From: Ruditapes philippinarum
Lineage: Eukaryota
Assembly: GCF_026571515.1 (NCBI RefSeq)
Contig: NW_026861320.1
Span: forward strand, 62,001 to 126,000
Length of the DNA stretch: 64,000 bases
Direction: 5' to 3'
The position numbers and the translations under genes were made by a program. The notes beneath the pieces were generated by a model. That model was not told the origin of the DNA, did no database searches, and worked only from the letters and a program-made list of their open reading frames with translations. Positions 421-34,046 of this stretch are shown here, one piece after another; the first letter of the stretch is position 1; the number at the start of each line of letters is the position of its first letter.

Positions 421-444
421 GAAAGAGAAACTAGGGGGAATTCC
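421..444 (+). promoter_or_regulatory. Composite ISRE/IRF + NF-kB motif
   Basis: GAAAGAGAAACT (GAAAnnGAAACT) followed after 2 nt by GGGGAATTCC (GGGRNWYYCC). Confidence 0.6.
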
Positions 445-7797: not shown

Positions 7798-9880
7798 TTA
7801 TTGCAAGCTTGTACCCAACATTGAGCTTACTAGTCTACATATATGAAACTTTGCTGCGTTATTTCTGTCTCGTATTTTCAGTGATAACAGATAACACTTT
7901 AAAGCCGCATCCATTCTGTTTTCTTGCTCCATACACTGACCTAGAAGGTTAAGCGCCGTTTCTCTGTGTCCAAAATTTGGCTCCTCTACAATGCATTTAG
8001 CAAGGTTTAACATTGCCGCCTGTTCCTCCCGATGCCTTCTGAGATGGGAATATGTCTTATACTGTAGAAACTATAAATAAGGTAGAGAATCTATCACAGC
8101 CAAATCCATCCAATCATCGTATTTACCTCTATAATTGATATCTTCTTGTGATGATCTGAACATTTCATGTTGGAGTTCGTAGGGACAACAGTTTATTTCG
8201 CATCGTAGAAACCTGACACAAAATGCAGTTATACTCTGCAACAATGTATATTCATTATCTGTTTCATAACAGAGCTTATTGAATGCCTTTTTGCGTTTAG
8301 GTGTTTGAAAATCGTAGCATTTACAAACTGGTTCAACTATATTGAGATCATAACCTTCTTCAATGTTTTTCAAAATGAATTCTGTCCTCTCAATATCTCC
8401 AGTACAATAGAACATTGAGGCTAGTTTCAGTTTACCTGACGCTACATCAATGTTTAAACCTAACGTCATCAAAACAATAGACTTTCGGCAGACACCGCGT
8501 TCACTTTGTAAGTTAATTGAAGCTAGTGCAGATCCTAAATGTATGCTTAGAAATTTAGCTATTTTACTACATGCTAATTTATTGTGCCCTTGATTCATAT
8601 CATGAGTTACTTTCATTAGGTATATATATAATGTTTGAAATAAAAGTCTGATGTGATTGATTTTATTCGTTTTTGTCAGAAAAAGCGTGTAATAGTCATT
8701 GACTCCACTGGCAATATCCCTTACTATCTTCAGAAGCAATCTCTACTAATCTCAAAAAAGTGTTTCGAATTCTGAACCCTAGTTGATCACATTCTATTTC
8801 AAGTAAAGCACTTCCGTTACTATTAATAATGTAACAAAGTCTTTCTAGAATGCTTTGTTTTGTTACTGGAGTAAAACGTCTAGCCATTAAATTGTTCTCT
8901 GGAATAATGAAATGTGGACAGTAATCATTTAAAACACAATTGTAAAGCAATGTCAGACAATAATTCAGACAGATAAGTAATGTGTTTTTGTTCCAATCAG
9001 TGTTGTTTGCACTTTTAATACAATGAAGCAAGACCGTTTTACACATGTAACTTGAAATGCTGTCAGGACATTGTGTGGTTATAAACGTTTTAAGAATCAT
9101 TTTCATCAAGACATAGCATCTGATATGAGTTATGTTGAGATTGAACATTAGATTTCTCTCAGCAAGGGAAGTGGATATTCTCCATTCAAATTCTTCATTA
9201 ACACTGCCTTTGCCTCCAACTGCTACAACAAAACATCCCGTGTCTTTACAATACTGTTTCATATTATATGTAGGCCACTGACCTTCACCTTGCTGATTCA
9301 TCCATTGTCTTGCTTGCGTTGGCCACTGTTGACATGTCAGTGCAGGGACAAAGTCAGCACTAACGAAACCAGGTCTTCCATTCATTAATTGTGCTGGACC
9401 ATGTCTAACATATTCAGCGTCAAATCCGATATTTAACATTGTATTCTTTACCAGTACTCTTCCTTTTCTATCTCTACACGTGTACTGATCAAACACATTT
9501 TCTTCTGGAAGTGGAGCATTATTTCTCAGTATCTGTAACAAACAATATCCTGGTGATACAGTATCATCCTGTATCATTAACAGGTTTTGTTTACCAGGTT
9601 CCCATTCACCCCAGTCTTGTATAACACTATAACCGGCATGTGTGAAAAGAAGATCTTCGTCAGAATAAATTCCAGGTGTTGTAGTACCCTCTACTCTACT
9701 ACCTAAGTAATACACATTCACACCTGCATATGATAATTGTTGTGTTATCGTACATAATATTTCGTTCAATAGCTGTAAGCGCCTACATTTTATTACCATT
9801 CTTTCGTTCATTCCTATCTCATAAAGTACTTTAGACAGTCTCAGTGACACATTACGAGTGTAATCGGGATTTTCCGACAT
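7798..9880 (-). pseudogene. cGLR paralogue with frameshift (26-nt deletion near 8724) and nonsense codon (TAG, 8071-8073); may still encode a 394-aa Mab-21-only protein (8696-9880)
   Basis: Three ORF pieces (9880-8696, 8739-8071, 8013-7798) are collinear with 29849-31960. The 26 nt at 30776-30801 are missing here, and the TAC of LPYLYFLQY has become TAG. Catalytic motifs LGSRVEG..SDEDLLF and SADFV are intact. Confidence 0.85.
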
Positions 9881-10545
9881 CCTGGAAATTTAATGAAACA
9901 TTATCATTTTCATCATAATTAAATGTATCAATAACAAAATAAAATGCAAGTCTGCAATTGACTTTGTAAGTATTAAATATAATTGTCTTATGGAAATGTA
10001 ATGTTGAAACTGAATGATTCAAACGTTTTCTAAATTGTTTGATTTTGTGTTTGCTTTTATTCATGATCGAATTTTATCAATAAATGATTTATTGCAGCTT
10101 ACGAACCTAAATAATTAAATAAATAAAATATAGTTATAGTAACAATTTGAATGGAATTGAGTGGTTTAAAAGAAACGGTATTGTAGTAAAAGACACAATG
10201 ATCGTTCAATTGTATTTTCAGGAACAAAATTCATAATTATTACTAGGAATTGTTTAAAACAGAGATTTTGATTTCCCCCACCATGTAGATGTTAATTTGT
10301 TATGATAATTGTCTATGACATGTACTTGGCAGTTTCTCTTCACTTATTTTATTTAGCATTTTCAATTGGTACAAAAAGTCATTTTAAAGTATTTCCGTGG
10401 TAATTCTCTTATTGGATGATTTTATTAAAGGTATATACTTAAACGCAAGTGAAAGAAGGTGTTAACACACCCTGAATCAAATATTTATATATACATATGG
10501 CCTAGATTAGTAATTTTACTGACATACGACTTCAACCATTATTTT

Positions 10546-10657
10546 GAAACAGAAATATAAAGTTCAAACTCCAGGGAAACTCCCTTTATAACAAATACTT
10601 ATAAACACAAATCAAGACGTACTTATTTCCTCCAACAAATATCTTAAAACCGAAACT
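10546..10657. promoter_or_regulatory. IRF/ISRE and NF-kB motifs 5' of the cGLR at 9880
   Basis: GAAACAGAAA (10546), GGGAAACTCCC (10574-10584) and AAAACCGAAACT (10646-10657; reverse strand AGTTTCGGTTTT). Confidence 0.55.
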
Positions 10658-12289
10658 CGAAAATGACCAAGCCTAGGAAATTCATTATTTCTCAATTAAT
10701 AATAAGGACATAATTGAGTCTCTACTATAATAAGTTTTACAATAAGTGAAGATTTACCAAATTAATAAAACTTTAATCAGAGTCACCTTATCATTAACAA
10801 GGACGTCAAGAATTGTTACTTTATATTATTCTATTATAACTTATTGTGAAACATGACGTGTTTATAAATATTAAGAAATTGTATAATTATAATCTGAAAA
10901 AAGAGCTGAGGGACATAAAACTTTGATAATACTATTTATTTTACTGTATGTGTAAGATCAAATCCTTCACACAATATTAAGATAACCTTATTGTATGAGG
11001 ATCTGTTCAAAAGTCTTTTTATCGATAGCTCAACATGCGCATTCAAAATAAGAGAAACTGTTTCTCATTTTTCATTGCAATGTACCCAATACAGAAAATT
11101 ATATCAAATATTTTCACTAATATAAATTTTCCGGCTACAGTTAATAACTTTCATCACGGCAACGAACATCTCTCTATTGATGAAAACAAAACCTCCTTCA
11201 GAATGTCCAAAAAATCATTAAATGTACTTCAATTTATTTTGTTATTGTGCCTAAGTTTATATATGAATTATAAATATATCATATAATAACAGTTTCTTAA
11301 TGCGACAAATATACGTACAAACAATAAAGAAAATAGAAAAATCTCTAAAGAAAGTTCAAAATGGCGGAATTGAAAATGTTGCAGGATCGGTTTGAATGAA
11401 CCTGTTAACGGATGGTACTGTCAAGTGCAAACTAGTTTCACGCCTCCTAGCACCGGCTTTAGCAGAATTCAACATTTAAACAATATAATGGAGTAATTTT
11501 GAATAAAGAAACATCCGCAGATGCGTTTATATGGCGGTTGTTATGGAACTTTCAATGCGACATATTCGTGCAATTCTATGTGGTATGGCCTTATAGTAAA
11601 AGAAAGCGTGGGTCTAAAGAGAAGATAATGGGAGGAACGTACAGTTTTGAAATATTGAAAGGAGATCAGAGGAAAAGAAGCCGGCATATCCCTAAGGGTG
11701 GTGATTGAACAGTGTTCAAGAAGTAATATTGGAACCACCCAACTAGAAAAATACCGAAAGGTGAAATATGATAAACAAGATCAACAAGGAAAGGTGGCAT
11801 TCAATGAACGCAACCCTCACACGAACGAGCAACAGAACCTGGAGGAACCCAAACAAAAACAGGACATGGCACAAGACAGAGTATTGGCAGGCTAATCACT
11901 AAAATGATACATAAGAACAAATAATTAGTAACCGGTTTGGAATTCAAAGAAAACATAGAAATGATTGAATAATAGGCCCACAAAAACGAAGGGGCGCAGG
12001 GGAAGGGGACAGGAGACCTGGGGAAGGGGAGGGGTAAATTAAAGAAATAATACTAGGAGCAAAGGGGAAGATACTTACTGTAGACGGAACAAAAAACAAC
12101 GAAGAAAAACAGAAGTGTCACCAAAACAGTATGAAACAACAAAGACATACATCTGAGGAACAAAGAGGGGCGCCGCCTTGATACGGTTAGCAGCATAAGA
12201 ACTGCTTGGGAAAACTAAAAGTAACACAAACACAGCAATTATATCTTGAATGATCGGAAATATTACATCTCTGATTGATTACAAATCTA

Positions 12290-18160: not shown

Positions 18161-18622
18161 ATCACATCAAATAGTTTCATTGTTTACTGATAAAATTAAA
18201 TATAATAAAGTCTTGGTTAGTTTATCAGACAAATTTAATAATATTAATGTCCTATTTATATGTACAAATTAATGCAGATAATTTTGTACATTTACACATC
18301 ATAAAATATTGCATGTAAACAAAGTAAATATCCGCTTTAATGTGTACTCCCTAACCGATTGTCCGAAAGTTAGTACATGTGATGGAGTGGTGATTAGGTA
18401 AAATCTATTTTAAGAACAGTGTTTCCTTCAGATCGAAGGCTATTTTTTATTGTTTAGATTGATTAGATAATAGATGCTGGGCTAGTTTTAGATAATTTTA
18501 ACCCTTTCATATGTTTAATTACAAATCATTTTGTTATCTCTGCTTTGAATTACTTCATGTTATAATGTAATAAAGGCACTAGGAATTTAATATGAGAATA
18601 GATTATACTTAATATGTGTATG

Positions 18623-18625
<3 letters not shown>

Positions 18626-18653
<28 letters not shown>
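18626..18653. repeat. (AT)n microsatellite
   Basis: Perfect AT run. Confidence 0.95.
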
Positions 18654-18656
<3 letters not shown>

Positions 18657-19079
18657 CGAATGGTATTGGTAACAAAAAAGGTAGTTTATACACCTGTAAC
18701 GAGATAATTCAATATACGAACTCATGGATAATGGTAATGAAGAAAGAAATAGAGAAAAACGGAATCCCTAAAGAACGCACACAACAATAAGAAAACAAAT
18801 GTTGCAAACTCGGTTTCATGGATGGTATTAGAAAATACAAGTTACCGTCCAAGCCCCCCATACCGACTTTAAACATTTAATTATGTACGAAATGATAGGC
18901 CCAGTTCACCTCACAAGCGTTTGGCAAGATGTACTAAACGTTTTTCTATGTTGATCAATATGTCATATAAAAGTTTATATAAACAAGAAGTAACTTAAGG
19001 AAGACAACAAGCCGCTACATCCTTACAACTAGAACGCCTGTATTCATATTGTCAGTTATCTGCCACGCCCACTCTTATT

Positions 19080-19277
19080 TTAATGCACGTCTGGACCAAA
19101 CTGTGAGCTTACTAGTATACAGATATGAAACTTTGCAGCGTTATGTCTGCGTCATATTTTCGGAGATGACAGATAAGACTTAAAAGCAGCATCCATCCTG
19201 TTTTCTTGCTCCATACACTGACCTAGAAGATTAAGTACTGTTTCTTTGTGTCTGAAATGTTACTCCTCTACAATGCG
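19080..19277 (-). pseudogene. Relic of a third cGLR: C-terminal TPR segment only
   Basis: Translates RIVEE*HFRHKETVLNLLGQCMEQENRMDAAFKSYLSSPKI*RRHNAAKFHICILVSSQFGPDVH*, matching the last ~65 aa of both cGLRs, with two in-frame stops. Confidence 0.9.
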
Positions 19278-19905
19278 TTAAGTACTAAATATATTATGTA
19301 TCATTTTTTTATTTTGTGTTGGAAATGAAGGAATTGAGTTAAAAGCATATTTCAAATATTAAAACATGTTTCAAATGACAAATACTGTAGTTTACATGGT
19401 TTGGAGAGGTAGGAGGGTTGTAGAGTGTGTAAGGGGGGAGGGGTAGTGGGTGAGGGGTGATGGCGGCTGTAGTGAACAATCAACGCGCCGGACAACTATG
19501 GTTTAACCCTGATCATAAGAAATGACCAAATATGTTTCAATTACTGCATTTTTTCCAGGAGGTGTCTTTGAACTCTTTTATTGCTAAAAGTATGTAACAC
19601 CAGATGTTAGCCAAAATCATCCCTCATGTTCCGGCACCATATGACTTAAAATTTGTTGGTGCCCCATAAAACAAAATCAAACCAAACAAACATTACTTAT
19701 TTTGAAAATTCCTTTTTAATGTTGAATTATTTTGTCCAGAATGAAAAGAATGAAATATAGACAAGTATTTAGCGTGTTAATGGTAGAAATACCATCATTT
19801 AAGCTTCATTTAATCAGTTGATAAAAATAATTTAAAGTAAAGGATGTAAAAATGAAAAATTACTGTTAGATCATTGGAAAGATATTCAATATATCAATAT
19901 TACAG

Positions 19906-20010
19906 AATGGTAGCACACCTTTGTTGCGAGCTTATGAGAATGAAGTTGATACACGAAATATTTATTGGTTTATTAAAACAAGGGGAGGCTACTCACTCAT
20001 GGACATGAAT
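19906..20010 (+). CDS. Probable upstream exon of the ankyrin-repeat gene
   Basis: Acceptor tacag| followed by NGSTPLLRAYENEVDTRNIYWFIKTRGGYSLMDMN (ankyrin G-x-TPL start). No clean phase-0 donor is visible. Confidence 0.5.
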
Positions 20011-22931
20011 TGTGATGGTTTTACACATTGTCCCTTTAGGAGAACACTTCTACGTTAAAAATGCAATAAGCATACATACAATAAAATCATTGACCCTCTA
20101 TTTTTAATTTTTAGGGGATTCGTCATATATGTTAAGAAATTTAAAAAAAAAATGTCTATGTTTATCATTTATAAATTTAATAATACAAAGCTTTATTTAA
20201 AGATGTACTATGCTCATCTTTTGGTAAAATAATTTTATCTAAGAAATGCATTGAGATCCATGAGATTCTTACTGAATATGTTTAATTTGAATGAAATAAT
20301 GAATAAACTATGTATGGGAAGTTGCATTTCCTATTACGAGTCAAGTTAAATTGGTCTTTCTAAAAAATCTCCCAGTTTTTTTAATGACAATATATATTCA
20401 TATGGTGACTACATATAGTGTGTAGAGTTCAAAACAAAACATATCTACCTTAAATGAATTCCAAACATGTTTATTTTATACATACAAAGAGACTGTGTAG
20501 CAATTATTGATATTTTTAAAAATACAATTTGGGCATAGTATATCTTTAAAAAGCCCGGTAAATCTGCTTTTTAATGAGCTAATATTTACTTGCTCTAATA
20601 TATTGTAGTGTGTTTTACTACCTTGCTTTAAAGTTAAAACGCGTGTGTTGTTCTGTTAATTGTAAGAGTATAACTAACAGTGATTTTTAGAGTACCAGAC
20701 AGTAACGTGGTTCTAAATTTAGAAAGTAAAAAATCACTTCAGCCTTCGTGTTTTTCATTTAAGCTGCTTATTTATCAACTAAAATATCAAATATTCATTT
20801 TTAGTTTCCCATTTTTTGTCATCCAATGGAAACGCTGCATTGTTAAATATTCCGAGTGTTAATTTTTATAGAAGAACAAAAGTCGATACTTTATGGAATT
20901 CCGTTCATAGTCAACTTCGTTTTTCAGAGTGCTTCATAGAACCGCTTAGTGACGTATTTAAGTGAATTATGAGGCCAAATAAAGCTTGACACTAAGTATC
21001 ATGTTAGTATGTAGCTGTTCTACATAATTAGAAACATTATCCTGTCGCTATCGCTCCCATCGAAATTTCTAATTTCTGAAGAACAGCACGGATGAACAAA
21101 AACTCTTAAGCCGAATCTGGAATTGTTAGGTAATTTTGTTGTGTTAAATGGTTCCAACAGATTTTTCACACACTGAATTCTGTGACCAACCTATATATAG
21201 TCGAATAATTATCTCATGAATGTTCTAAATAACGTAATTTATTGTATGAAAACCATTGATGTTTTTCCCTCATTTTATGATGCTTGAATAGAAATTACCT
21301 TTTTACACTTGAAACCTCTCACATGTCAAGTCTCCTACTACATGTACTAAAATTACATCGTTACTTAAAGGAGTTATATGATTGCTTAATTTATTTGATT
21401 TACAGGAATATATTCAACAAATGGTTTGTATATAGTCATTACACAGAACAACGTGTTAATCAGATTAGATAATTCAAATATTGTTTGGAATTCAATGATA
21501 TAATCAAGTTTCAAACCTTTTTATTTTTCTGTTTTTTTTTTAAATGAAATAAAATACGTTAGGATATGTAAAAATCAATGAATTGTTTACAATTAAGTAC
21601 TGGATTACCAGTTAAGATTGTATTTCTGATTGGTTAAAATATTACAGCTGTGGATATGATTTTTAAGAATTCATTAAACTTCAAAGAAATACAATATGTC
21701 TTCCAAATGACATAAAACAGTAAAAAAATGAAATCAGAGTGATATCCTGGTTTGTAATGTTTCAATTATGGTAACATGCCAAGAAAACGTATGAAATTTG
21801 ATTGTTCCGATTTAAAAGCCTTTGCTATAAACTGTTTCTTTGCTCAATTTCTACTTTATATGAAAAAGAAAAATCCCTTACTTTTATAATACAGATTTAC
21901 ATTACATGCTTTATATGACCGTGATCTTTTTCTGACACTGCAGTCATTACTTGAAATGAAAATAAGTAATCTTTATCTGTTGATAAACATTTTATTTCAA
22001 GTAAAGTATACATAGCTAGATATATTAATCTGTGCCGGTAAGCTTTCTTTAACCCACATTGTGACATGAACCAAATGTTTAGAGTAGCAACTGCATATGA
22101 ATTAAAGGTGTCTGCGATCGGTCTTTATGTAAACGCGTGTACAAAAATGTTTTTCAGAATCATTTAATATTAAAAAAAGTTAGCTATCAAACCTTTTAGA
22201 ATTTTTTTATATAAAATAGGTCTTCCTATAAGAGACCACAAGTGCTTATAATAGACAGATTTGTTTTCTTGATTCAATTATTGGATTATCACTGTATATT
22301 AGCTTATAGAATCCTCAAGTAGGCCTCAAACAAATTTGCATTTTAGTTGATCTTTGAATGGTCCACTTGCTAATTAATGCTTTCCTTTCATGATTTGATG
22401 GATCAATCATCATTGAACCAATAAAGTCTGTATCTTAGTCTTTGCAATCTTTAGAATATTTAATCTTTAGACAGGACTAACTTGATAATGTTTTCTCTAA
22501 AGAACCCGGTAATACCCCTGAAATGGCTCCAGAGCTTATACAGATTTATCTATTGTGACATAATGACCTAGCCAGCAACATGTTTTTCATATAGGGCAGT
22601 CTTTCGCAATCCTGTCTTTCTCTATTTTTTGATCATAATTTCATTAACGTGATTTGTACATAATTGACCATTGATTTGTTTTAGCATGGTTAAATATCAA
22701 ATTGAATACAATGATGTTAAAATGTAAAGTTAGTTTCACTTTTACCCGTGAACTCACCAGTGACATTTAGATGGGCATACTGTCATCACTTAAAAAATAC
22801 TTTATACGGACCATCATTTACATAAATAAGGTGTCATAAATAATAATAATAATAATAAAAAAAACAAAAAAAAAACAAAAAAAACTAGATACGAGATTTT
22901 TACTGTAAGAACGCATTGATATCATTTCCAG

Positions 22932-25900
22932 ACTGGAGATTCTTTGGAACAGAAGCTAACCAAGGTTGCTAAAGAGCATCATGTTTCAACATGGATAGAT
23001 GTTAACCAAACACAGGTACATTATATACGTTGACTTTCTTTCCAGATTTTTATACTTCACAAAACAGCAGGTGTCAAGTGCTGTGTGGCAGCAGTAAAAA
23101 GTTGCCCCGTACTTCACTTCAGTGTTGTTATATTTTTCTGGTCCTTCGGGATCATTGATGCCAGCACTATTAAGTGTTGAGAATTGAGTACCGCTCAAGC
23201 CGGTGCTGGGGGCGTGAGAGATGTTGCACTTATTCATTATCTCTCATGTACAGACTCAATCAAACCGAGTCTGCAATTCTCTTGTAATTTTGTTGTGATT
23301 AATGCTTCCGAGGGATCACTTTCTTTCCAGATTTCTAAACGCAAATAACTTTATTTAGATGAAATGATCAATCCAGTTTGATCAGTACAATTTCACTTTA
23401 TTGCTAAGATTAATTTTATGAGTAGAGTGTTGTACTGCATTTCAGTCCTTTTGTCGTTCTGTTGTTTCAAATGCTACGGAAAAGTATTTTCTAGAAAGAA
23501 GCACGTATTTCACAAAATAGAAAATTTTGTCAAACTTTAAATTTTTGCTCAAATTAAATATTAAATAGACCGTATACTAAAAAAATTGACTAATGCTAAT
23601 TAATATATCTTGCTTTTATTTCAGAACAATGCTATAGCCTTGTTTGAAGCCGCAGCAACTGGGGATGTTAAAAAAGTTTTTCAGTATAATAACGCTAATT
23701 ACCAAGACAAGGTGAACCATTTTGTTATTGTCTATTTTCTTTAATGCATTTACATTTGTATATCATATGATTATTTGCTGTCATTTTCTGGGGATATATT
23801 ATAATTTCTTTGATCTTCTTTCAATGTATTTTCTTTCACAAAATCACAAAATATTCTTACTTGGTAACAGGTAGAGAAAATAGAGTTTTTAGAAAGTCCA
23901 AAGAAGACCTTTAGAAAACAGTAATTCAATAAATTAAGGATAGAATAATTTAAGTATTGGAGTCACGTATTGTTTTGAATTTCAAATGTAAATTCAATGC
24001 ATGCTGTGCTTATAAAATACTTTCATATTAAAGGAAAGCTAAGAAATAGGTACTCTTTACTACAAGACTAATCAAAACCTGAAATTTGAATAATTTTGCA
24101 TTTCTCGTTTTTTAGTTCTATTAGCGTCATAAAATTTAACTTGTTAGAAATAAGAACATGGTAATAACTTTTTAATTATTCAGGAAAGCCATTAAGGCAG
24201 ACCAACAAGATACATGTATGACAAAAATGTGTCCAAATATGCTTAAAAACACAAACAGAAAAAAACAGCTGTAAGAAATATAAACTTTAATCTGATGAAG
24301 TTTCAAAATTTTATTAATATATTATTGATGAATTGCTGATTTTTACTTTTAGAATGGGTTTACTGCTTTAACAAGAGCAATAGTATTCAACCAGTTTGAT
24401 GCAGCTAGAGAACTTTGTACCAGAAGGCCTGCCTTGAGAAAAATAGGAGACAACGTAAGTCTACGCCTTATCAATGTTTTAATATTTATTAATAATATGA
24501 TATAATTATTGTTAGGTTATGTATATTCGAAACAAAATCTCTTTCAAAGTTAAAGTTGCAGATGCAACCAAGACACAGCGATTTATACATGTCATAGCTG
24601 CAATTCATGCTGTGGAGTGATTCAGTTTAACCCTCAATTGTTTGCAAATAGTTTTCGAGGCATAGAAGGGCACGTGACTTGTTTTTGATTTTTTTGTACA
24701 TAGATTAGCTCTTGATCTCTAAACCGGGTATGGTTGTTAAATTTATCAGGTATAAAGCATGACTGCTTGTGTTTTCCTTCTTCATGAATCATTTTTATCA
24801 AACATTAAAAAACAAATAAAGTACGATGTGCAAACGCATTCGTCTTAAAAACCGTTTTGGCAAACAAAAAATACAAGTATAAGATGTCAAATGTATTTTT
24901 TCAGCCGGAAGATAATCTGGATTATCTCTCCTTATACTTAAAAAATGTTGTTTTTTTACAAAAAAATCAAAGATGAGATGTTGTTTGTTTTTCAGTGCAA
25001 TCGTTATCCACTACATTATGCCTATGCATTACCCAAGGAGCAAGGTGAACAGTTTATCAAAGTAATTTTAGAGAAAGATGCTAACGAGATTGAAAACAGG
25101 GTAGATAAAGTAAGGGATATTAAAAGCATTTCTGTATTTCATTGATCTATGGCCTAATATTACTTTTAAGAAAACACTTAATGATAACTCAATAGTCGAC
25201 AACTTCCGAATCAGGCTTTGAAACAAATTATTTGAACGTCTCTGTACGTATGCCAAATCAGGTAGCCTGGAAGTTTGGCCGAAGTAGGACACTGACATAC
25301 AATTCCAGATATAGAAGCAAATACCTTAATCTCACAACTGCTTAGATTACACAAAAATAAATCACAGCAACAAACACAAATCAAGAAATAACATTTATGT
25401 TTTCGTAATTAGATCAGAATTTATTTCAATTTTCAATTATTGATCAAGTTGTATATCTGATATAACTTTGAAAGTTAAAAAAAAAGAAATTGAACAACAG
25501 CAATTTTGTTTTATTTTTAAAGGATGGAAGGGTAGCAGCTGATTATGCAGAATTACGAGAAACAAAGGAGATAAAACAAATGTTGTACGATGCTAGAACA
25601 CTTGACTTGTTTGGAAAGGTAATGCTATTTCTCATTTTATATCAGTCAACGTGGAAGTTAACAAAAACGAACTTTCATCAGTTTGTTTTACTGTTTGTAG
25701 ATTTAGTTTAGTTTGCGTTCATTGAACGCCGCCTTTCCTTGTTGATCTTGTTTATCATATTTTAGATCGTTTTCGACTGCTTTTAAGTAAATAAGATATA
25801 CATGTATGTATAGTGAATAAATTCCAAATAATTCATTAAAAACTTTTAAACAAGATAAGTATTATGATTATTGTACAGCTAGATAAGTTCGTTTATCCAT

Positions 25901-26184
25901 TACATTAATCAATTATATTCATTAAATTCTTTTAGATAATCATGTGTATTCTCACTCATGAAGTCAGCGTTTCGTTTTTGCCGCTCCTCATTTGCCGATC
26001 CTTATTTGTCTTGCATATGTGTTTAGCAATTACTTGAATCCTTATTTTTGTTTTTCGTTATTTCACTGCACTGTTAATAGTTCCTTCTATGTTCTCTTTA
26101 AATGTTATGTATCATTTTCAGAGAGGACGACCATTAGGTCCGTGGCCAAAGGGTGCTGACCATATTCCTCCGACAGAACAATAA
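22932..26184 (+). CDS. Ankyrin-repeat protein, 3' part (exons 22932-23015, 23625-23711, 24353-24454, 24996-25109, 25523-25618, 26122-26184); start not found
   Basis: Six phase-0 exons with AG/GT boundaries join into one frame: TGDSLEQKL...[22 protein letters not shown]...[26 protein letters not shown]...[16 protein letters not shown]...[12 protein letters not shown]...[15 protein letters not shown]...EQ*. Ankyrin D-x-x-G-x-T-x-L pattern. AATAAA near 26666. Confidence 0.82.
23033..23334. repeat. ~290-bp interspersed repeat (copies at 6425-6670, 6756-6876 inverted, 13490-13630, 14100-14358, 17355-17525; related subfamily at 11330-11710, 18750-18870, 29180-29645)
   Basis: Shared strings tatttttctggtcc, gtgttga.aatt.a.taccgctcaag, ctcaatcaaaccga.tctgcaa and ctttccagatt. 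Confidence 0.75.
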
Positions 26185-26816
26185 ATGTTTAAACAAGAGT
26201 GATGACGGAGTTTGAGAAATGTTCAAAACATTTGTTTCACAATATTCTATAGATAAATCATAGTCAACGTTAAAAAATACAACTCGTGGTTCAGAAAAAT
26301 ACAAGAGTACACGAGTGAATATTACAAGGACTGAAAAATTGTATTTTTCAAACAAAGAAAACAAAGATTTTTTTCTATGTAATCTAATAGTAGGAACAGT
26401 TGTCTTCGGAAAAGCTTCGAAGGAATTTATATTTTTACTGTCAAGAGATGTCAGAAAATATTGAGAGATTATTTTACTTTATATATGTTTCATGTACAAC
26501 AAAATACTTGTTATTTATGATGATGATATAAATTTCGAATGTTAGGATAGCAGATCTGTGATAGTATGTAACAGGGGGAATACATTCATCTTTACTTAAG
26601 CTCACATTGTGTTTTATTATAACTTGCTAAACACAACTATGTTATTTCTTGTTAAATGTATACACAATAAACGTATTTTTTACAACTTTTAGATTTCCTC
26701 CTATTAATCACCTCATATTAAGCTTTAATTGAAATACTAGCATTTGTAAATATGTTGAAAAAAAAACTCCAACTGGGACAGACTGCCTTTCCCGAACAGA
26801 CATTTGGCCACCTTGG

Positions 26817-27836
26817 TTTTTTATGCCCCCGAAGGGAGGCATAATATAATCGCACCATCTGTCTGTCTGTCTGTCTGTCCGTATGTCTCTCCCACTTCAT
26901 TTGTGTCCGGACTGTAACTTTGTCATACATTGAGGGATTTTGAAATAATTTGGCATAAATGACGACCACATCAAGACGATGTAACACGTCCCTACCGCAA
27001 AGGCAAGGTCACACTATCATTTTGAAGTTTCACATTATCACAATAAGAGTAAATTGGTACACCCATTCGTGTCCGGACTGTAACTTTGTCATGCATCGTA
27101 TGATTTTAAAATAACTATGCATAAATGTCTACCACATTAAGACGATGTGTCTCGTTTAAGAATTACGTCTCTACCTCAAAGGTCAAGGTCACATTAACAT
27201 TTTGAAATTTCACATTATCATAATTAGAATTAATAGGTACACACACTCGTGGCAGGGCTATAACTTTGTCATGCATCAAAGGATTTTAAAATAACTAGAC
27301 ATAAATGTCTACCACATTAAGGCGACATGTCGCGACAAAGATCCATGTCCCTACCTTCAAGGTCAAGGTCACACTTATAGTTTGAAAGTACTCATTCTCT
27401 CGAGAACATTTTGTTGAAGATACACATTCATGTCTGGACTGTAACTTTGTCATGCATGGAAGGATTTAAAAAAACTTGGCACAAATGTCTACCACATCAA
27501 GACAATGTGTTGCGGCTAAGGTTCATGTCCGTCTATCCGTGTGTCCCCACTTACACAACAATCATGTCCAGACTGTAACTATGTCATTCATTGAGGGATT
27601 TTGAAATAATTTGGCACAAATGTCTCATAACAGCATTTTGTCCCGTCTAGGAACCACGTCCCTTCTTCAAAGGTCAAGGTCACACTTATATTTTGAAGGT
27701 TCATGCTATCACAATTAAAGGTGACAGGTACAATAATACAAAGAACAATAGTCAGCAATTAGTTACTTTCATTCTTTTTTCTTTTTATAAAGCCTGCATG
27801 CTTAAAAAACAATTCCGGTGGCATTTGTCACTTGTT
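26817..27836 (+). mobile_element. HINE-like element with diverged ~170-180-bp units
   Basis: TTATGCCCCCGAAGGGAGGCATA start, (CTGT)n, repeated ggactgtaactttgtcatgcat / aaggtcaaggtcacac. A related fragment lies at 50690-50945. Confidence 0.75.
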
Positions 27837-29848
27837 GGCCTTCTATATCCTTAAGGGTTTTAGTGTCTTTTACCAAATGTTTTGCGAACTTGATCCACCA
27901 AAAACATTATTGCGAGGTAAAGGGCACAAATATAGGGTATAAAGCACATTGTTTTAGTTCATCCATTCAGAGAGTGCATCTGGCCAGTGTCTGAATCAGC
28001 ATGAAGTTGTCTTTAAAGGACATCGACTAAGTGTTAAGATTTCGATGAGGATATGCGCATTTAAAAGCTTCTATTGGGATCTGAATATTTCGTATTTTGC
28101 AATAAAGAAATAATACTAGAACAAAATGCTTATAGTTGATAATTAGATACATCATGAAAACAATCTCAAATTAGACTCAAAAATTAAACACAAATATTTT
28201 TCTTTTCAATTTAATTTATTTAGATTTCAAACATATAACATTATATGAACAAGAGCACCACAAAGACGGGAAATATATGTCTGAACAAACGTTTGTTTGA
28301 GTAGTCAAAAATATTTTTTATCAATTAGGGAAGAAAAACATTCATGAAACCTTATGTGCATGATTCACACAACTTCTAAAGAGGTCAAACAATCAATGCT
28401 ACATGTCAAATATTTTAACTTTGTGCATTTTGGTTTCATACAACATAATGTTTTAAGCATACCAATATACGCGAAAATTATTTCGGGTGTATATAATATA
28501 ATAAACTTTTACATGACACTTTTACGAAAATATAAAATATGATAGGAAACTTTGGCTGTTTTGTATCATTTTTGGTAAACATTTATTTTATATATCCAAG
28601 TAACTATACACTGTTTCTATGTTTGCAACAAAATGAAACAACTTTAATTAATAAAGCCACAAATATTCAATTTTAAATGTGTTTGGAAAAAAAAAAAAAT
28701 AAATGTAAAATTTAATCTGCATATTGAATCTTCACTGGGACTTTGTTTTTCATATAAAAACTATTGAAACAATTATTTACCGAACTCGTTCATTTATCGT
28801 AACATCTCTGCTCAAGATAGGTAGTCGTTTTGAAACCCTATAACTGCTTAACAAATAGATTCGTTTTAGCTTATCTGATAACTGATATAAAATAACTATG
28901 ATTTGATTATTCTCTTTGGCACGCTGACGTATTCAGTAAAACAAATATAAACAATTTCGTTTGTGATTAATATGTTTAGAGGGTAACGTTTGATAAGTTT
29001 TTTTTAAACTTATTTACACTATTATATATATGTACATGTATTGTTATAAGTAAGTGAATTTTATTTTGTTTAAATTTTCATCAAAAATATTTACATAATG
29101 CTTTCAATGACATAATTGTTGTGTAAACATGTTTTTGATATTTTAAGTTTCTTCTATTTCGACCTTTTCAACTTGGGTGGTTCCAGCATTCCTACATGAA
29201 TACTGTCTAATCACCCTTATGATATGTTGCCTGCTTTTTAAATTGTCTTTTGACGTCTTATCTGTGATATGTAGGTTTCATAATCTCAGATCCCGTTTCA
29301 AAATTCCATTTTATTCAGTTCCGCCCACTGTTTTCTCGTTTAGGGCACAAGCATTTCTTTACTTTGGGACCATATGCCGCTTTTCATGGAATGACACTTA
29401 CATGTACGTGTCACATTGAAGGTTCCATGATTACCGTCATATGAACACATCTGCGGATGTTTCTAATTTTCAAATTGTACCAGTTCGTGTTAAATGTTGA
29501 ATTCTGCTTAAGCCGGTGCTAGGAGGCGTGGACGGTAATTTTCACTTTCCAGTACTGTCCATGAACAGGCTCAATCAAACCGAATCTGCAACATTTTCAA
29601 TTTTGCCGTGTTGGGCTTTCTTTAGGGATTCTGTTTTTCTCTATTTTAATTCTTCTACAAGTCTGACAAATCATGCATAACTTTACACATCGTAAGCATG
29701 ACACATTTTTCCTAGATCAAATAAACTAAATTATATATCTATACTATTCCATTTTCAAATATATGACAAGTTAAACCTTTCTGTAAAAAGAACATGTTTT
29801 CATATCGTCAGTTCGCACTCACAGAAACCTAGTGCTTCCATTTTCATT

Positions 29849-31960
29849 TTAACGCAAACCTGGACTCAACATGGAGCTCACTAGTCTACAGATATGAAAC
29901 TTTGCAGCATTATTTCTGCCTCGTATTTGCAAAGATAACAGGTAACACTTTAAAGCAGCATCCATTCTGTTTTCTTGCTCCATACACTGACCTAGAAGAT
30001 TAAGTGCTGTTTCTTTGTGTCCGAAATTTGGCTCCTCTGTAATGCATTTCGCAAGGTTGGAAATGGCTGCCTGTTTATCACGATGTCTTCTGAGATGAGA
30101 ATATGTCTTATACTGTAGAAAGTATAAATACGGCAGAGAATCTACCACAGCCATATTCATCCATTCATCATATTCACCTCTATAAGGGATGTCTTGTTGC
30201 GGTGATCTGAACATTTCATGTTGGAGTTCCTTCGGACAACAGTTTATTTCGCATCGTAGAAACCTGACACATGACGCAGTTATACTCTGTAACAATGCAT
30301 ATTCATTATTTGCTTCATAACATAATTTATTGAATGCCTGTTTGGGTTTAGATTCTTTAAAATCGTAGCACTTACATATTGATACAACTACACGGAGATC
30401 ATAATTTTCTTCAATGTTTTTCAAAATGATTTCTGCCCTCTCAATATCACCAGTACAATAGAAAATTGAGGCTAGTTTCAGTTTACCCGATGCTACATCA
30501 ATGTTTAGACCTAACGTCATCAAAACGATAGACTCTCGGCATACACCACGTTTACTTTGTATGTTAATTGAAGCCAGTGCGGATCCTGAATGCATGCTTA
30601 GACATTTAACTATTGCACTACATGCTAATTTAGTTTGCCCTTGATTCATATCATGAGTTACTTTCATAAGGTATTTATATAATGTTTTCAATAGAAGTCT
30701 AATAGGATTGCTTTTATTCATGTTATTGAGCAAGACCATGACACAGTCATTGATTGTTTGAGCAGTATTGTTAACTAGTTGTCCTGACATCATACAAGAC
30801 ATGTATTCAGGAACAATCTCTACTAATCTCAAAAATGTGTTTTGAATTCTAAACCCAAGTTGGTCACATTCTATTTCAAGTAAAGCACTTCCGTTACTGC
30901 TTATAATGTAAGAGAGTCTATCTAGTATGATTTGTTTTGTTACTACAGTAAAACGTCTCGCCATTAAATTGTTCTCTGGGATGATAAAATGTGGGCAATA
31001 GTCATTTACAATACAATTGTAAAGTATTGTTAGACAGTAATTTAGACAAATCAGTAAGGTGTTTTCGTTCCAAGCATTGTTGACTGTACTTTTAATACTA
31101 TGAAGTAAGACCGTTTTACACATAAAACTTGAAATGCTATCAGGGCATTGTGTGGTTATAAACGTTTTAAGAATCATTTTCATTAAGACAAAGCATCTGA
31201 TTTGTGTTATATTGAGACTAAACATTAAATATCGCTCGGCAAGGGAAGTGGATATTCTCCATTCAAGTTCTTCATTAACACTGTATCTGCTTCCAACTCC
31301 TACAACGAAACACCCCATATCTTTACAATACTGTTTCATATCGTTTGTAGGCCACTGACCTTCAACTTGCTGATTCATCCATTGTCTAGCTTGCAATGGC
31401 CACTGTTGACAAAAAAATCCAAGGACAATGTCATCACCATAGAAGCCAGGTATTTCACCCAGTGATCGTGCTGGACCATGTCTAACACGCCTATCATCCG
31501 CCGCTGGATGAACTATTGAATTCTTTAATAATACTCTTCCTACTCTATCGCTATACCAGCTCTGATTACACACATTATCTTCTTGAAGTGGAGCATCCTT
31601 TCTTAGTATCTGTAATAAGCAATATCCTGGTGATACAGTATCATCCTGTATCATTAACAGGTTTTGTTTACCAGGTTCCCATTCACTCCAGTCTTGTATC
31701 ACTTTGTACATGGGAAGTGTGAAAAGTAAATCTGTGTCAGAATTAAGTCCAACTGTTGTAGTGCCCTCTACTCTACTACCTAAGGAATACACATTGACAT
31801 CTCCATGTGTTAATAATTGTTGTCCTATTGTTTTTAATGTTTCTTCAAACAGACGTAGTCGCCTTTGTTTTATTACCATTCTTTCGTTCACACCTATCTC
31901 ATCAAGTACTTTAGACAGTCTGAGTGACACATTGCGAGTGTAATCAGGAATTTCCGACAT
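29849..31960 (-). CDS. cGAS-like receptor (cGLR; Mab-21 nucleotidyltransferase + C-terminal TPR region), intact, 703 aa, single coding exon
   Basis: Uninterrupted ORF with NTase motifs LGSRVEG...SDTDLLF and GDDIV, Mab-21 motifs HGPA, WPLQARQW, WRISTSLAE, SSFMCKT, CPHFIIPENNL, and a TPR-like end (ETALNLLGQCMEQENRMDAALKCYLLSL). The true start is probably MSEIPD at 31960, because a splice acceptor (tatttacag|G ATG) precedes it and the paralogue starts at the same position. The ORF track's extra 11 aa would then be intronic. Confidence 0.9.
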   Translation of the reverse strand: MSEIPDYTRNVSLRLSKVLDEIGVNERMVIKQRRLRLFEETLKTIGQQLLTHGDVNVYSLGSRVEGTTTVGLNSDTDLLFTLPMYKVIQDWSEWEPGKQNLLMIQDDTVSPGYCLLQILRKDAPLQEDNVCNQSWYSDRVGRVLLKNSIVHPAADDRRVRHGPARSLGEIPGFYGDDIVLGFFCQQWPLQARQWMNQQVEGQWPTNDMKQYCKDMGCFVVGVGSRYSVNEELEWRISTSLAERYLMFSLNITQIRCFVLMKMILKTFITTQCPDSISSFMCKTVLLHSIKSTVNNAWNENTLLICLNYCLTILYNCIVNDYCPHFIIPENNLMARRFTVVTKQIILDRLSYIISSNGSALLEIECDQLGFRIQNTFLRLVEIVPEYMSCMMSGQLVNNTAQTINDCVMVLLNNMNKSNPIRLLLKTLYKYLMKVTHDMNQGQTKLACSAIVKCLSMHSGSALASINIQSKRGVCRESIVLMTLGLNIDVASGKLKLASIFYCTGDIERAEIILKNIEENYDLRVVVSICKCYDFKESKPKQAFNKLCYEANNEYALLQSITASCVRFLRCEINCCPKELQHEMFRSPQQDIPYRGEYDEWMNMAVVDSLPYLYFLQYKTYSHLRRHRDKQAAISNLAKCITEEPNFGHKETALNLLGQCMEQENRMDAALKCYLLSLQIRGRNNAAKFHICRLVSSMLSPGLR

Positions 31961-32790
31961 CCTGTAAATATAATTAAAAATTATTATTTTCATCGTAAAT
32001 ACAAGTTACAATAACTAAAGAAAATGCATGTCTACAATTGACTTTGTAAATATAAAATCAAATTTTCTTCTGGAGATGTAATTTTCAGCACAACATGAAT
32101 AATTAAACAGTAAATAAATTGTTATATTTTATGTTTGTTCTGTTCATTTTGTTATTTTATTATAGTCTGTTTTATGGAACCTTTAAAGAATCTTTCTATT
32201 GAGATATTTTCTTTACACAGATTAAAAGCATTTAACCAACTCTGACTTGAAATTGACACAATAATGGAATTAATTCCTATTTCATTTGTTCCTTAAATAT
32301 AATATATGCTAAAAGAATAATGAAAGAATACTAATTTTAAAAAGAAAACAACATATATGGATTGTTGTTCAAAAGAAAAGATAAAAAAAATGTTATGTTA
32401 TATCCTTCCGTTGATCCTCAATATAAAATTTATAACCCATTTACAATATACTTTATTGAATATAATTATACCCCCCAAAGACCTTACTCATAATTTAAAA
32501 TGTTTAAAAAAAAAGAACATCAAGTGATCAATAAATAATGGTAAATAACTTGTATTATTTACATGATTAAGATCTTGTGTGTTTGGGAAGAATAAGAATA
32601 TTCGAATAAAAGAAATTATCTTTTTATGATTTATGTATTTATTACACCTTCAATATTTTTTGTAGATAGTTTAAAAATTGAAATTTATAATGCTTAAACA
32701 TCCAAGTAAAACAATTAATGCTATTTTTACACGACATGCAGAAGTAAAGTATTGGTCAATTTACCTACATTCAACTTAAAAATAAATATT

Positions 32791-32833
32791 GAAAACAGAA
32801 ACTGACAAAACAAACATACCTTGGGAACTTCCC
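32791..32833. promoter_or_regulatory. IRF/ISRE and NF-kB motifs 5' of the intact cGLR; possible 5'UTR-exon donor
   Basis: GAAAACAGAAACT (32791-32803) and GGGAACTTCCC (32823-32833). A minus-strand donor AAG|GTATGT lies at ~32819. Confidence 0.55.
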
Positions 32834-34021
32834 TATTTTCTTACAAGGTATTAAAAGAATCACTGATGAGAGATATTACAAGATTCTCATTATAGTCTCT
32901 AGTTAAATTTCTTAAAAATTAGATGTCGATCGTACCAAATCCCATCAATAAATCTAAATAAACAATTAAGTGCACATATTCTTTTATTAATTTTATTCTA
33001 AACAAGGAAGTTAATATTTCTTTGCCCTCATGTTTTGACAAACGATAATGTCTTTTTCGCATGAACTAGGTCAACGATTAAGTAAGTATACTGTGCTCCT
33101 CTTAGTTCACGGTACTTAACACTTTAAACAGTAAAGAACACAAACAATAAACTTACACTAAAAAATGTCATAAACTGTATCATTTAGTCATTTTTCTGCT
33201 ATATGACACAAGGAAACAACAATAATTCAATCAAAATTAGTTTTACTTTGTCAGATGAAACCGTGTGTCGCCATTTAAAAAACAGTAATGTCATCAATTT
33301 ACCTCGCGGTAATGGTGTTTTATTTCAGTTTTTCTCATGTTTCAGTTAAAATTTTTTTAAGTTATTTTGCATAATTTAAATTATTAAAAGTAATTTTACA
33401 TTGTAACTCAAAATTTATTTTTTCAACAAACAAGACATTTAGAAAATGATGATTTGTTTCAGACGTATGCACAAATTTAATGGACTATTGTTGTTTTTTG
33501 CAGAAGTTTGTAAGATGTTGTTCAGTTTTTACGTAAAATCTATAGATTTAAATTATTTTGCACAGAAACTTTGTTGTTAAGGTGTTTGAATTAAATATGT
33601 CAATTCTGACCAATTATAACAATGGTCACATGAAAATATGCCATTACCGTGAGATAAATGATGACGCGGAATTAGTGATGTTGAGTATAAGCCATGTAAG
33701 TAAATAAGAAAAAATACAAAATTTACCAAATTAAATTAGTCAAGAACGAATTAACGAACAATTTAATTTGGAAAACGCTAACCTAACCAATTTGATGTTT
33801 AAAACAGCCGATGAACTAGCTTACTAGTTAAAGTAAATATGTTCTGATTCATGTGTAACTGAAATCTTAAACGTGTCTTTAACCTGCGGCAATCCTTTTG
33901 AGCTACTATATAGTGTCTCAATATTACTCAATAATGAAATAAAATATGTTTGAATATGAAAATCAATTAGTCGAAATAAATACCTGTTAAGTTAAGCAGC
34001 TTGAAAACTTGATCATAAATT

Positions 34022-34046
34022 GAAAAGGAAAACTAGGGGGAATTCC
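34022..34046 (+). promoter_or_regulatory. Composite IRF-like + NF-kB motif, about 2.1 kb upstream of the intact cGLR
   Basis: GAAAAGGAAAACTAGGGGGAATTCC; paralogous to 421-444. Confidence 0.6.

What the first reader, a model, noticed from the sequence alone, without database searches (positions are those of the whole stretch)
7798..34046. Birth-and-death cluster of TPR-fused cGAS-like receptors with repeated IRF/NF-kB motifs
Seen: one intact, one truncated and one relic Mab-21+TPR gene in the same orientation; the two copies that retain a 5' flank carry GAAAnnGAAA and GGGRNWYYCC motifs there. Known: animal cGLRs make cyclic dinucleotides for STING, and bivalves have large cGLR expansions plus IRF and Rel factors. 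Inference: an infection-inducible array of second-messenger-synthesising sensors with positive feedback, in which the TPR module may gate ligand or partner recognition. No STING gene is visible in this window.
Basis: partly seen in the sequence, partly recalled or inferred. Interest (0 to 1): 0.8.

Follow-up and report, generated by a model that had tools for sequence, protein, structure and literature searches.

The report
Clam cGAS-like receptor gene array
This stretch of Manila clam DNA holds one working, one recently broken and one relic copy of a cGAS-like immune-sensor gene fused to a TPR-like domain. It is an ordinary piece of a gene family with hundreds of copies, of a kind already catalogued in bivalves.

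Summary
All copies lie on the minus strand.

- **Gene 1 (29849-31960):** an intact 703-codon coding exon. RNA reads show it spliced to a non-coding exon 1 that ends at 33984.
- **Gene 2 (7798-9880):** full length, not truncated. It is broken by a 26-bp frameshift deletion near 8727 and a TAG at 8071-8073.
- **Relic (19069-19282):** 63 codons with 2 stops.

The N-terminal half has the cGAS/cGLR fold (Z 24), and the catalytic residues G61-S62, D75, D77 and D177 are conserved across 50 paralogues. The C-terminal half is a divergent TPR-like solenoid: it matches TPR proteins by fold, but falls below the Pfam threshold.

The genome (Ruditapes philippinarum) gave 871 first-look candidate places, arranged in tandem arrays. 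Li et al. 2023 already reported more than 200 cGLRs in some bivalves, and cGLR-TPR fusions.

The kB-like plus GAAAnnGAAA composite is real and recurs in about 25 copies of exon 1 in one young clade. However:

- it lies inside the transcribed 5'UTR;
- it is no better conserved than its neighbouring bases;
- it is absent upstream of seven more distant paralogues.

Inducibility, feedback and the nucleotide product are untested. The scan noted similar arrays elsewhere in this genome. Verdict: a new member of a known kind.

The parts
29849..31960 (-). Gene 1 coding exon: 703 codons plus stop. It encodes a Mab-21/cGLR nucleotidyltransferase (aa 1-380) followed by a TPR-like domain (aa 381-703).
   Evidence: ORF. 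Pfam Mab-21_C 2e-11. AF2 pLDDT 88. VIA Z 24 to MB21D2, Sp-cGLR1, Cv-cGLR1 and cGAS. RNA depth on the exon and the splice acceptor at 31961.
31962..33983 (-). Intron 1 of gene 1: 2,022 nt, GT..AG on the minus strand. It contains a dispersed repeat at 33049-33836.
   Evidence: Joint 31960/33983 'skips 2022, CT..AC' in 2 contigs of X1 and 3 raw RNA reads of X24.
33984..34127 (-). Non-coding exon 1 of gene 1. The 3' end is shown by reads. The 5' end near 34120-34127 is inferred.
   Evidence: Spliced reads carry at least 61 nt on each side. X1 contig spans 33990-34127. Conserved block in 17 paralogue copies. 25 copies genome-wide, all beside clade-A genes.
34022..34046 (-). Composite on the gene strand: kB-like GGAATTCCCC, 5 nt, then TTTCCTTTTC (the reverse of GAAAnnGAAA). 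It lies 38-62 nt before the exon-1 donor.
   Evidence: The exact composite is kept in 12 of 22 clade-A upstream regions at 13-15 nt start-to-start offset; gene 2's looser 28-29 nt version is counted among the 12.
34145..34192 (-). Inferred core promoter: a TATA-like GATAAAG at 34145-34151 and an inverted CCAAT box (ATTGG) at 34188-34192.
   Evidence: Both are conserved in the alignment of 11 clade-A promoters. Their role is inferred, not shown.
32820..32875 (-). Alternative 5' exon, with the donor CAAG|GTATGT at 32820/32819. It carries GGGAAGTTCCC just before the donor.
   Evidence: Joint 31960/32819 in 2 contigs of X1 with side 55. Sequence read.
7798..9880 (-). Gene 2: a full-length paralogue, 85% nt and 75-77% aa identical to gene 1. 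It is disabled by a 26-bp deletion near 8727 and a TAG at 8071-8073. The remaining ORF (8696-9880) encodes 394 aa, which is the whole Mab-21 domain.
   Evidence: Catalytic residues are kept, and dN/dS is 0.42 and 0.37 in the two halves.
10528..10670 (-). Putative non-coding exon 1 of gene 2. It is a diverged homologue with the donor GTC|GTATGT at 10528/10527 and a looser composite at 10546-10584.
   Evidence: Assigned by homology only, with no RNA evidence.
19069..19282 (-). Relic of the last 63 codons plus the 3' flank of a further copy, with two in-frame stops.
   Evidence: tblastn 2e-20. blastn 83-84% identity to both genes.
366..490 (-). Exon-1 block, with its composite at 421-444, of the neighbouring intact copy. 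That copy's coding exon is at G000:C9807:57269-59374, 2.6 kb left of the window.

Best explanation
The region is part of a tandem array of a clam-expanded subfamily of cGAS-like receptor (cGLR) genes in Ruditapes philippinarum.

Gene structure. Each gene has a short non-coding exon 1, one intron, and a single coding exon. The protein is about 700 aa: a Mab-21 nucleotidyltransferase domain with a complete catalytic site, followed by a divergent TPR-like helical domain that carries a Cys-rich insert.

State of the copies. Gene 1 is intact, transcribed and spliced. Gene 2 was disabled recently. A third copy is reduced to a relic. This is ordinary birth-and-death turnover.

Most likely mechanism (inferred). 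A ligand binds the fast-evolving surface formed by the spine helix, the N-lobe loops and the first TPR helix. This activates the NTase, which makes a nucleotide second messenger read by STING or another receptor.

The composite motif. The kB-like plus ISRE-like composite belongs to the duplicated 5'UTR exon of one young clade. It may confer Rel/IRF responsiveness, but that is not shown.
For: Shown:
- Three copies and their lesions.
- Mab-21_C passes the Pfam cut-off in all 50 paralogues scanned.
- AF2 model with pLDDT 88 and pTM 0.88.
- Foldseek probability 1.0 to Sp-cGLR1 and cGAS. VIA Z 24.7/24.4/24.1/23.6 to MB21D2, Sp-cGLR1, Cv-cGLR1 and mouse cGAS.
- E65, D75 and D77 are invariant, and G61, S62 and D177 are kept in at least 90% of 50 paralogues. 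D177 aligns with the third catalytic Asp region of Sp-cGLR1.
- The C-terminal domain alone gives pLDDT 89, and nearly all of its top 50 structural matches are TPR or TPR-like repeat proteins at Z 10-12.5.
- A GT..AG splice joint is seen in RNA.
- 871 first-look candidates in the genome, and every one of the 64 scored matches is strong. Most are intact and lie in tandem arrays.
- Pairwise dN/dS is 0.37-0.49. Local peaks of about 1.0-1.4 fall at aa 31-60 and 151-180, and 0.9 at aa 381-410.
- Li et al. 2023 (PMC9980059) report more than 200 cGLRs in some bivalves, 247 cGLRs and 9 STINGs in Mercenaria, and cGLR-TPR fusions.
Against: - No biochemical data exist for any member of this subfamily.
- The Mab-21 NTase Pfam model is below threshold in gene 1 (17.8 bits against 24.1).
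- The Mab-21 domain is near-neutral (pI 6.25, family median 6.5). That is unlike the basic nucleic-acid-binding surface expected from cGAS, which is my own recollection and was not tested here. The ligand may therefore not be DNA or RNA.
- MB21D2, which ties for the best structural match, also has a complete putative active site (PMC9980059). From my own knowledge, not checked here, no product is known for it.
- Only one weak STING_LBD exon hit (30 bits) was found in the genome.
- RNA depth on the coding exon may include reads from paralogues.
Confidence: 0.8

Rival explanations
1. The kB-like plus ISRE-like composite is a working Rel/IRF-responsive element. It would make this clade infection-inducible, with positive feedback through STING signalling.
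For: - The composite recurs with fixed order and 13-15 nt start-to-start offset in 11 of 22 clade-A upstream regions, plus a looser version upstream of gene 2.
- The few other kB-like sites in those regions have no ISRE-like neighbour.
- The block has only about 25 genomic copies, all beside these genes, so it is not a transposon.
- IRF and Rel-homology genes exist in the genome.
Against: - It lies inside the transcribed exon 1. Spliced reads carry at least 61 nt of that exon, and a contig reaches 34127. Conserved TATA-like and CCAAT elements lie further upstream.
- Column conservation is 0.79 for the kB site and 0.92 for the ISRE-like site, against 0.81-0.83 for neighbouring non-motif columns. 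Descent alone can therefore explain it.
- No kB-like site was found within 4 kb upstream of 7 paralogues from more distant clades.
- No induction data were found in the literature.
Confidence: 0.3
2. The proteins are non-enzymatic Mab-21 scaffolds or adaptors, as in MAB21L1 and MiD49/51. Shrimp Mab21 proteins that activate IKK-epsilon outside the canonical nucleic-acid-sensing paradigm are another example. On this reading the TPR-like domain would recruit partners.
For: - MAB21L1 (Z 21.2) and MiD49 (Z 19.4) are also strong structural matches.
- The shrimp example is in PMC12928593.
- The Mab-21 domain is near-neutral.
Against: E65, D75 and D77 are invariant and G61, S62 and D177 are kept in at least 90% of 50 paralogues down to 46% identity. 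That is not expected if catalysis were dispensable.
Confidence: 0.1
3. Gene 2 is not dead. Its 394-aa ORF would give a TPR-less, possibly constitutively active or decoy, enzyme isoform.
For: - The frameshift falls at codon 387, at the boundary between the two domains.
- The catalytic residues are intact.
- An exon-1 homologue with a good donor is present.
Against: - The region after the frameshift shows the same dN/dS (0.37) as the enzyme part (0.42). That fits a recent lesion in a formerly full-length gene.
- Other copies in the genome carry scattered stops, as expected from plain decay.
- No RNA evidence was obtained for gene 2.
Confidence: 0.15

Closest known systems
Animal cGAS-like receptors (cGLRs), in particular the bivalve expansions and cGLR-TPR fusions catalogued by Li et al. 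2023 (PMC9980059); solved examples Sp-cGLR1 (8gjy) and Cv-cGLR1 (8gjw)
   Same: - Bilobal Mab-21 NTase fold (Z 24).
- The GS...DxD...D catalytic signature.
- A very large lineage-specific gene number in a bivalve.
- An appended TPR-type module.
   Different: - No product, ligand or receptor is known for this subfamily.
- Only 16-20% identity to the solved cGLRs.
- The Mab-21 domain is near-neutral.
- The TPR-like domain is too divergent for Pfam and carries a Cys-rich insert of about 85 aa.
- I could not confirm that these exact proteins are in the paper's tables.
Human MB21D2 (7lt1)
   Same: It ties for the best structural match (Z 24.7, 326 aligned residues) and has a complete putative active site.
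   Different: MB21D2 is a single-copy vertebrate gene. This clam family has hundreds of copies, evolves fast and carries an appended TPR-like domain.
TPR proteins (KLC1, BBS4/8, APC6/Cut9, TOM70, OGT, HOP/PP5 three-repeat modules; IFIT5 among the weak Foldseek hits)
   Same: The C-terminal 300 aa is built of helical hairpins. Three-repeat modules superpose on aa 486-700 at rmsd about 3 A.
   Different: - Z of only 10-12.5, under the caution level for helical repeats.
- Foldseek E is 4e-3 or weaker.
- Pfam TPR scores fall below the gathering cut-off.
- An insert rich in conserved Cys interrupts the repeats.

Membership tests
cGLR / Mab-21 (CD-NTase superfamily) | Bilobal cGAS-like nucleotidyltransferase fold | tested here: met
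   VIA Z 24.7-23.6 to MB21D2, Sp-cGLR1, Cv-cGLR1 and cGAS. Foldseek probability 1.0, TM 0.67-0.69 on the target. Pfam Mab-21_C 44 bits against a cut-off of 24.1.
cGLR / Mab-21 (CD-NTase superfamily) | Catalytic signature: G-S loop, [D/E]x[D/E] on the next strand, and a third acidic residue | tested here: met
   G61-S62, D75-T-D77 and D177 are invariant or kept in at least 90% of 50 paralogues. D177 aligns with the Sp-cGLR1 'VDL' Asp. Gene 2 keeps all of them.
cGLR / Mab-21 (CD-NTase superfamily) | Ligand-stimulated synthesis of a cyclic di- or oligonucleotide | not testable with these tools
   Needs recombinant protein, NTP assays and LC-MS.
cGLR-STING pathway | A STING receptor encoded in the same genome | tested here: inconclusive
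   One STING_LBD exon match of 30 bits (cut-off 27), containing a stop, on contig C7837. None in the window.
TPR repeat proteins (Pfam TPR models) | Sequence match to a TPR model above the curated cut-off | tested here: not met
   Best is TPR_2 at 17 bits against 27, at aa 652-680. Only 5 of 50 paralogues reach E of 0.01 or better for TPR_2.
TPR repeat proteins (fold level) | Antiparallel helix-pair solenoid that superposes on solved TPR domains | tested here: met
   Domain model pLDDT 89. Nearly all of the top 50 VIA matches are TPR or TPR-like repeat proteins at Z 10-12.5 with 115-214 aligned residues. This is moderate, because Z is below about 13.
Rel/IRF-inducible immune promoter | kB and ISRE elements upstream of the transcription start | tested here: not met
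   The motifs lie 38-62 nt before the exon-1 donor, and spliced reads carry at least 61 nt of exon 1. A transcript contig reaches 34127. The conserved TATA-like and CCAAT elements are further upstream. The TSS itself is inferred.
Rel/IRF-inducible immune promoter | Transcript induction on infection or PAMP challenge | not tested
No published induction data were found.
Birth-and-death multigene array | Same-strand tandem paralogues with intact, disabled and relic members | tested here: met
   The own contig carries at least 5 full-length copies plus the relic.

The most novel reading that the evidence does not exclude
The hypervariable first helices of the TPR-like domain, together with the fast-evolving spine helix and N-lobe loops of a near-neutral Mab-21 domain, would form a diversified binding site for non-nucleic-acid ligands such as pathogen proteins or metabolites. 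The hundreds of clam paralogues would then be a germline-encoded receptor repertoire that signals through nucleotide second messengers. One young clade would be wired to Rel/IRF through a kB/ISRE module in its 5'UTR exon.
Probability: 0.15. Interest if true: 0.75.

Novelty: new member of a known kind. Interest (0 to 1): 0.38.

Why it matters
Bivalve cGLR expansions are known, but their ligands, products and regulation are almost entirely unexplored. This locus gives three concrete things to work with:

- an expressed, intact TPR-fused cGLR with a mapped gene structure;
- a defined set of fast-evolving surface segments;
- a compact, conserved 5' exon module that reporter assays can test directly.

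It adds no new kind of system. The architecture and the scale of the expansion were both already reported.

Tried and rejected
- **The look-up of encoding contigs on P0002.** I wanted a transcript contig to map the 5' end.
- **Upstream regions of 20 distant paralogues.** Only 7 regions of 4 kb could be fetched, so the absence of the composite in distant clades rests on a small sample. Exon 1 could also lie further than 4 kb upstream.
- **Li et al. supplements.** I searched for Mercenaria accessions of this family and found none. One file was cut when stored, so membership in their catalogue is likely but unconfirmed.
- **Foldseek on the C-terminal domain.** No hit at E of 0.001 or better.
- **ESM Atlas on the C-terminal part.** Only unnamed mollusc clusters.
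- **Transposon origin of the exon-1 block.** Rejected: about 25 copies, all beside family genes.
- **The 714-aa reading of gene 1.** Rejected: its first 11 codons are intronic.
- **The big representative-protein search.** Not run, because no claim here rests on an absence of relatives.
Full report
**Organism and place.** The window is G000:C9807:62001-126000 of a 1.41-Gb assembly. The contigs that carry the closest paralogues have lengths of 248,866, 142,309, 110,627 and 293,765 bases. These are the same lengths as the contigs on record for NCBI proteins named Ruditapes philippinarum LOC1327.... The genome is therefore the Manila clam.

**Observation.** tblastn of the long ORF against the window gives four HSPs, which make up three copies on the minus strand.
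- Gene 1 is an uninterrupted frame at 29849-31993.
- Gene 2 (7801-9913) matches gene 1 over its entire length at 75-77% amino-acid and 85% nucleotide identity.
- A nucleotide alignment shows three lesions in gene 2: an in-frame 3-bp gap at codon 50, a 26-bp deletion at codon 387 (window about 8727) that shifts the frame, and TAC>TAG at codon 613 (8071-8073). 'Truncated' is therefore wrong. Gene 2 is a full-length copy with two disabling lesions.
- The relic (19086-19274) covers the last 63 codons with two stops. Nucleotide homology runs 19069-19282 at 83-84% identity to both genes.

**Gene structure and expression.** I laid two contig runs and two raw RNA runs on 29700-35600.
- A joint 31960/33983 skips 2,022 nt with CT..AC ends, which is GT..AG on the minus strand. 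It appears in two X1 contigs and three raw X24 reads, with at least 61 nt on the shorter side.
- A second joint, 31960/32819, appears in two X1 contigs.
- The acceptor is ...tatttacag|G ATG TCG. The true start codon is therefore at 31960 and the protein has 703 aa, identical to P0001. The 11 codons upstream of it are intronic.
- Depth is present across the coding exon and nearly absent over most of the intron, so gene 1 is transcribed and spliced. The level is low, and part of the depth may come from paralogues that are 95-99% alike.
- All seven distant and all 18 complete clade-A paralogues that I inspected have the same ...AG|(G/A)ATG acceptor directly before the start codon. The structure of a non-coding exon 1 plus one coding exon is thus family-wide.

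**The protein.**
- Pfam gives Mab-21_C at 2e-11, above the cut-off. The Mab-21 NTase domain scores 0.004 in gene 1 (below the cut-off) and 1e-8 in gene 2. TPR models are all below the cut-off.
- Of 50 paralogues, all 50 hit Mab-21_C, 30 hit Mab-21, and at most 5 hit any one TPR model.
- A sequence search of the PDB puts a cGAS-like receptor 1 first (8gjy, 1e-9), followed by MB21D2 and cGAS.
- An AF2 model from a 50-sequence alignment has pLDDT 88 and pTM 0.88.
- Foldseek gives probability 1.0 to Sp-cGLR1 and cGAS. The Foldseek-independent search gives Z 24.7, 24.4, 24.1 and 23.6 to MB21D2, Sp-cGLR1, Cv-cGLR1 and mouse cGAS. Bacterial CD-NTases score 14-16 and OAS1 scores 13.
- In the alignment, E65, D75 and D77 are invariant, and G61, S62 and D177 are kept in at least 90% of sequences. 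HMMER aligns the D177 region with the 'SVDLTLG' segment of Sp-cGLR1. The catalytic signature is thus complete and under selection. Gene 2 keeps it as well.

**The C-terminal domain.**
- Folded alone from 27 sequences, it gives pLDDT 89.
- Nearly all of its top 50 structural matches are TPR or TPR-like repeat proteins, at Z 10-12.5. They include BtubC/KLC, BBS4/8, TSK, APC6/Cut9, TOM70, OGT, PilW/PilF, PlcR/Rap, HOP, PP5 and Sgt2.
- Three-repeat modules align to model residues 106-320 at rmsd about 3 A. This implies that residues about 520-607 of the protein are an insert between repeats.
- That insert holds conserved cysteines at C529, C531, C564 and C574.
- Foldseek finds only TPR proteins, but at E of 4e-3 or weaker.
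- I therefore call the domain TPR-like by fold, not a Pfam-grade TPR.
- Relatives of this domain are confined to venerid clams and unnamed JGI fragments. The Atlas gives only mollusc clusters.

**Family size and turnover.**
- The own-genome search found 871 first-look candidates. The 64 matches scored (from the 63 best candidates) are all strong. Most are intact frames of about 700 aa in same-strand arrays: at least 14 on C4899, 8 on C10424 and 7 on C5714. A minority have 1-3 stops.
- The window's contig carries further copies at 19888-21786 (one stop), 25033-27135 and 57269-59374.
- Pairwise dN/dS of gene 1 against 11 clade-A paralogues is 0.37-0.49, with dS of 0.19-0.34.
- A sliding window over all pairs shows ratios of about 1.0 at aa 31-60 (the end of the long N-terminal helix), 1.4 at aa 151-180 (the N-lobe loops next to D177) and 0.9 at aa 381-410 (the first helix of the TPR-like domain). 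The C-lobe and the last repeats give 0.1-0.3. This is descriptive and is not a site test.
- Gene 2 shows 0.42 before and 0.37 after its frameshift, so its lesions are recent.

**The motifs.**
- GAAANNGAAA occurs 18 times in the window against 7.3 expected. GGGRNWYYCC occurs 7 times against 2.4 expected.
- Three kB-like sites have an ISRE-like neighbour within 30 nt: at 421-444, 10546-10584 and 34022-34046.
- A self-comparison shows that 72-7166 is a diverged duplicate of 33715-38638. The site at 421-444 is therefore the homologue of 34022-34046. It belongs to exon 1 of the copy whose coding exon lies just left of the window.
- A 141-nt probe of exon 1 finds 25 places in the genome. All are on contigs with clade-A genes, and those beside genes scored lie on the same strand as those genes.
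- In 22 clade-A upstream regions, the exact composite GGAAWTCCCC followed by TTTCYNTTTC at 13-15 nt start-to-start offset is present in 11, plus a looser version upstream of gene 2. The few other kB-like sites there lack an ISRE-like neighbour. Recurrence is thus real and far beyond chance.
- However, mean column identity is 0.79 for the kB site and 0.92 for the ISRE-like site, against 0.81-0.83 for the flanking exon and intron columns. Descent with general constraint on the block is enough to explain it.
- The spliced reads carry at least 61 nt of exon 1, and an X1 contig runs from 33990 to 34127.
- An alignment of 11 promoters shows a conserved ATTGG box, a TATA-like AATAAAAGGA/GATAAAGGGA, and a conserved start region ATCGCA(A/C)ATTTTCG further upstream. 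By inference this places the start near 34120-34127 and the composite at about +75 to +105 in the 5'UTR.
- Seven paralogues from clades at 50-59% identity have no kB-like site, strict or loose, within 4 kb upstream.
- IRF genes (at least 3 loci) and Rel-homology genes (2 loci) exist in the genome. One STING_LBD exon scores 30 bits.

**Comparison with what is known.** Li et al. 2023 (PMC9980059) describe 3,020 cGLRs. They report more than 200 genes in some bivalves, list Mercenaria mercenaria with 247 cGLRs and 9 STINGs, and note fusions to TPR and ankyrin modules. The closest relatives of gene 1 outside its own genome are dozens of Mercenaria proteins. I could not find their accessions in the stored supplements, one of which is cut. 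No paper on this subfamily in clams turned up. A shrimp study shows Mab21 proteins signalling outside the canonical paradigm (PMC12928593), and I keep that as a rival.

**Caveats.**
- The Mab-21 domain has a predicted pI of 6.25, with a family median of 6.5, so a nucleic-acid ligand is not a given.
- No enzymatic, ligand, induction or receptor evidence exists.
- The transcription start is inferred.
The coding sequence is one exon.

**Verdict.** The regulatory and feedback reading is unproven and somewhat weakened. The thing itself is a new member of a known kind. Other notes of this scan report further arrays of the same family elsewhere in this genome.

Noticed in passing
window 39008-40150 (-): A 380-aa ORF with TPR repeats (TPR_2 1e-9) followed by a Fic domain (4.5e-26). 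It looks like a FICD/HYPE-like AMPylase gene or exon, and lies just beyond the duplicated 5' flank of gene 1.
   Followed up: partly
window 2615-3734 and 45166-48606; also 60374-61756, 49127-50229, 26985-27514, 37011-37451: Satellite arrays. A 145-bp unit occurs in two arrays (7.8 and 23.9 copies, 87-89% matches). There is also a different 145-bp unit, a 166-bp unit, a 180-bp unit and a 161-bp unit.
   Followed up: partly
window 33049-33836 (inside intron 1 of gene 1): RNA depth is very high, with most reads fitting only partly and many loose ends. This is a dispersed repeat transcribed from many other places, not part of the gene.
   Followed up: no
window 33987-34016 (-): Exon 1 carries a conserved upstream ATG. 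In gene 1 it opens a 9-codon uORF ending 3 nt before the donor. In several paralogues it is in frame with the main ATG across the splice, which would add 11 residues.
   Followed up: partly
window 32820-32850 (-): The alternative 5' exon ends with GGGAAGTTCCC, a kB-like palindrome that misses the strict pattern by one base, 4 nt before its donor.
   Followed up: no
gene 1 protein aa 520-607 (window about 30140-30400): A Cys-rich insert lies between TPR-like repeats, with short strands and conserved C529, C531, C564, C574 and several acidic residues. It may be a metal-binding site.
   Followed up: partly
window 56466-56837 (+): A 123-aa ORF with a weak DEAD-box helicase match (E 0.005, below the cut-off). 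It may be an exon of a helicase gene, or chance.
   Followed up: no
proteins P0143, P0146, P0147, P0161, P0162, P0176, P0201: Annotated clam proteins of about 365-375 aa recur that hold only the C-terminal TPR-like domain, without Mab-21. They could be gene fragments, internal-start isoforms or true stand-alone modules.
   Followed up: no
L014 (G000:C9807:59275-65374): The neighbouring copy has two exon-1-like blocks upstream of its coding exon, 2,970 and 2,221 nt from the ATG. The first exon appears to have been duplicated locally.
   Followed up: no
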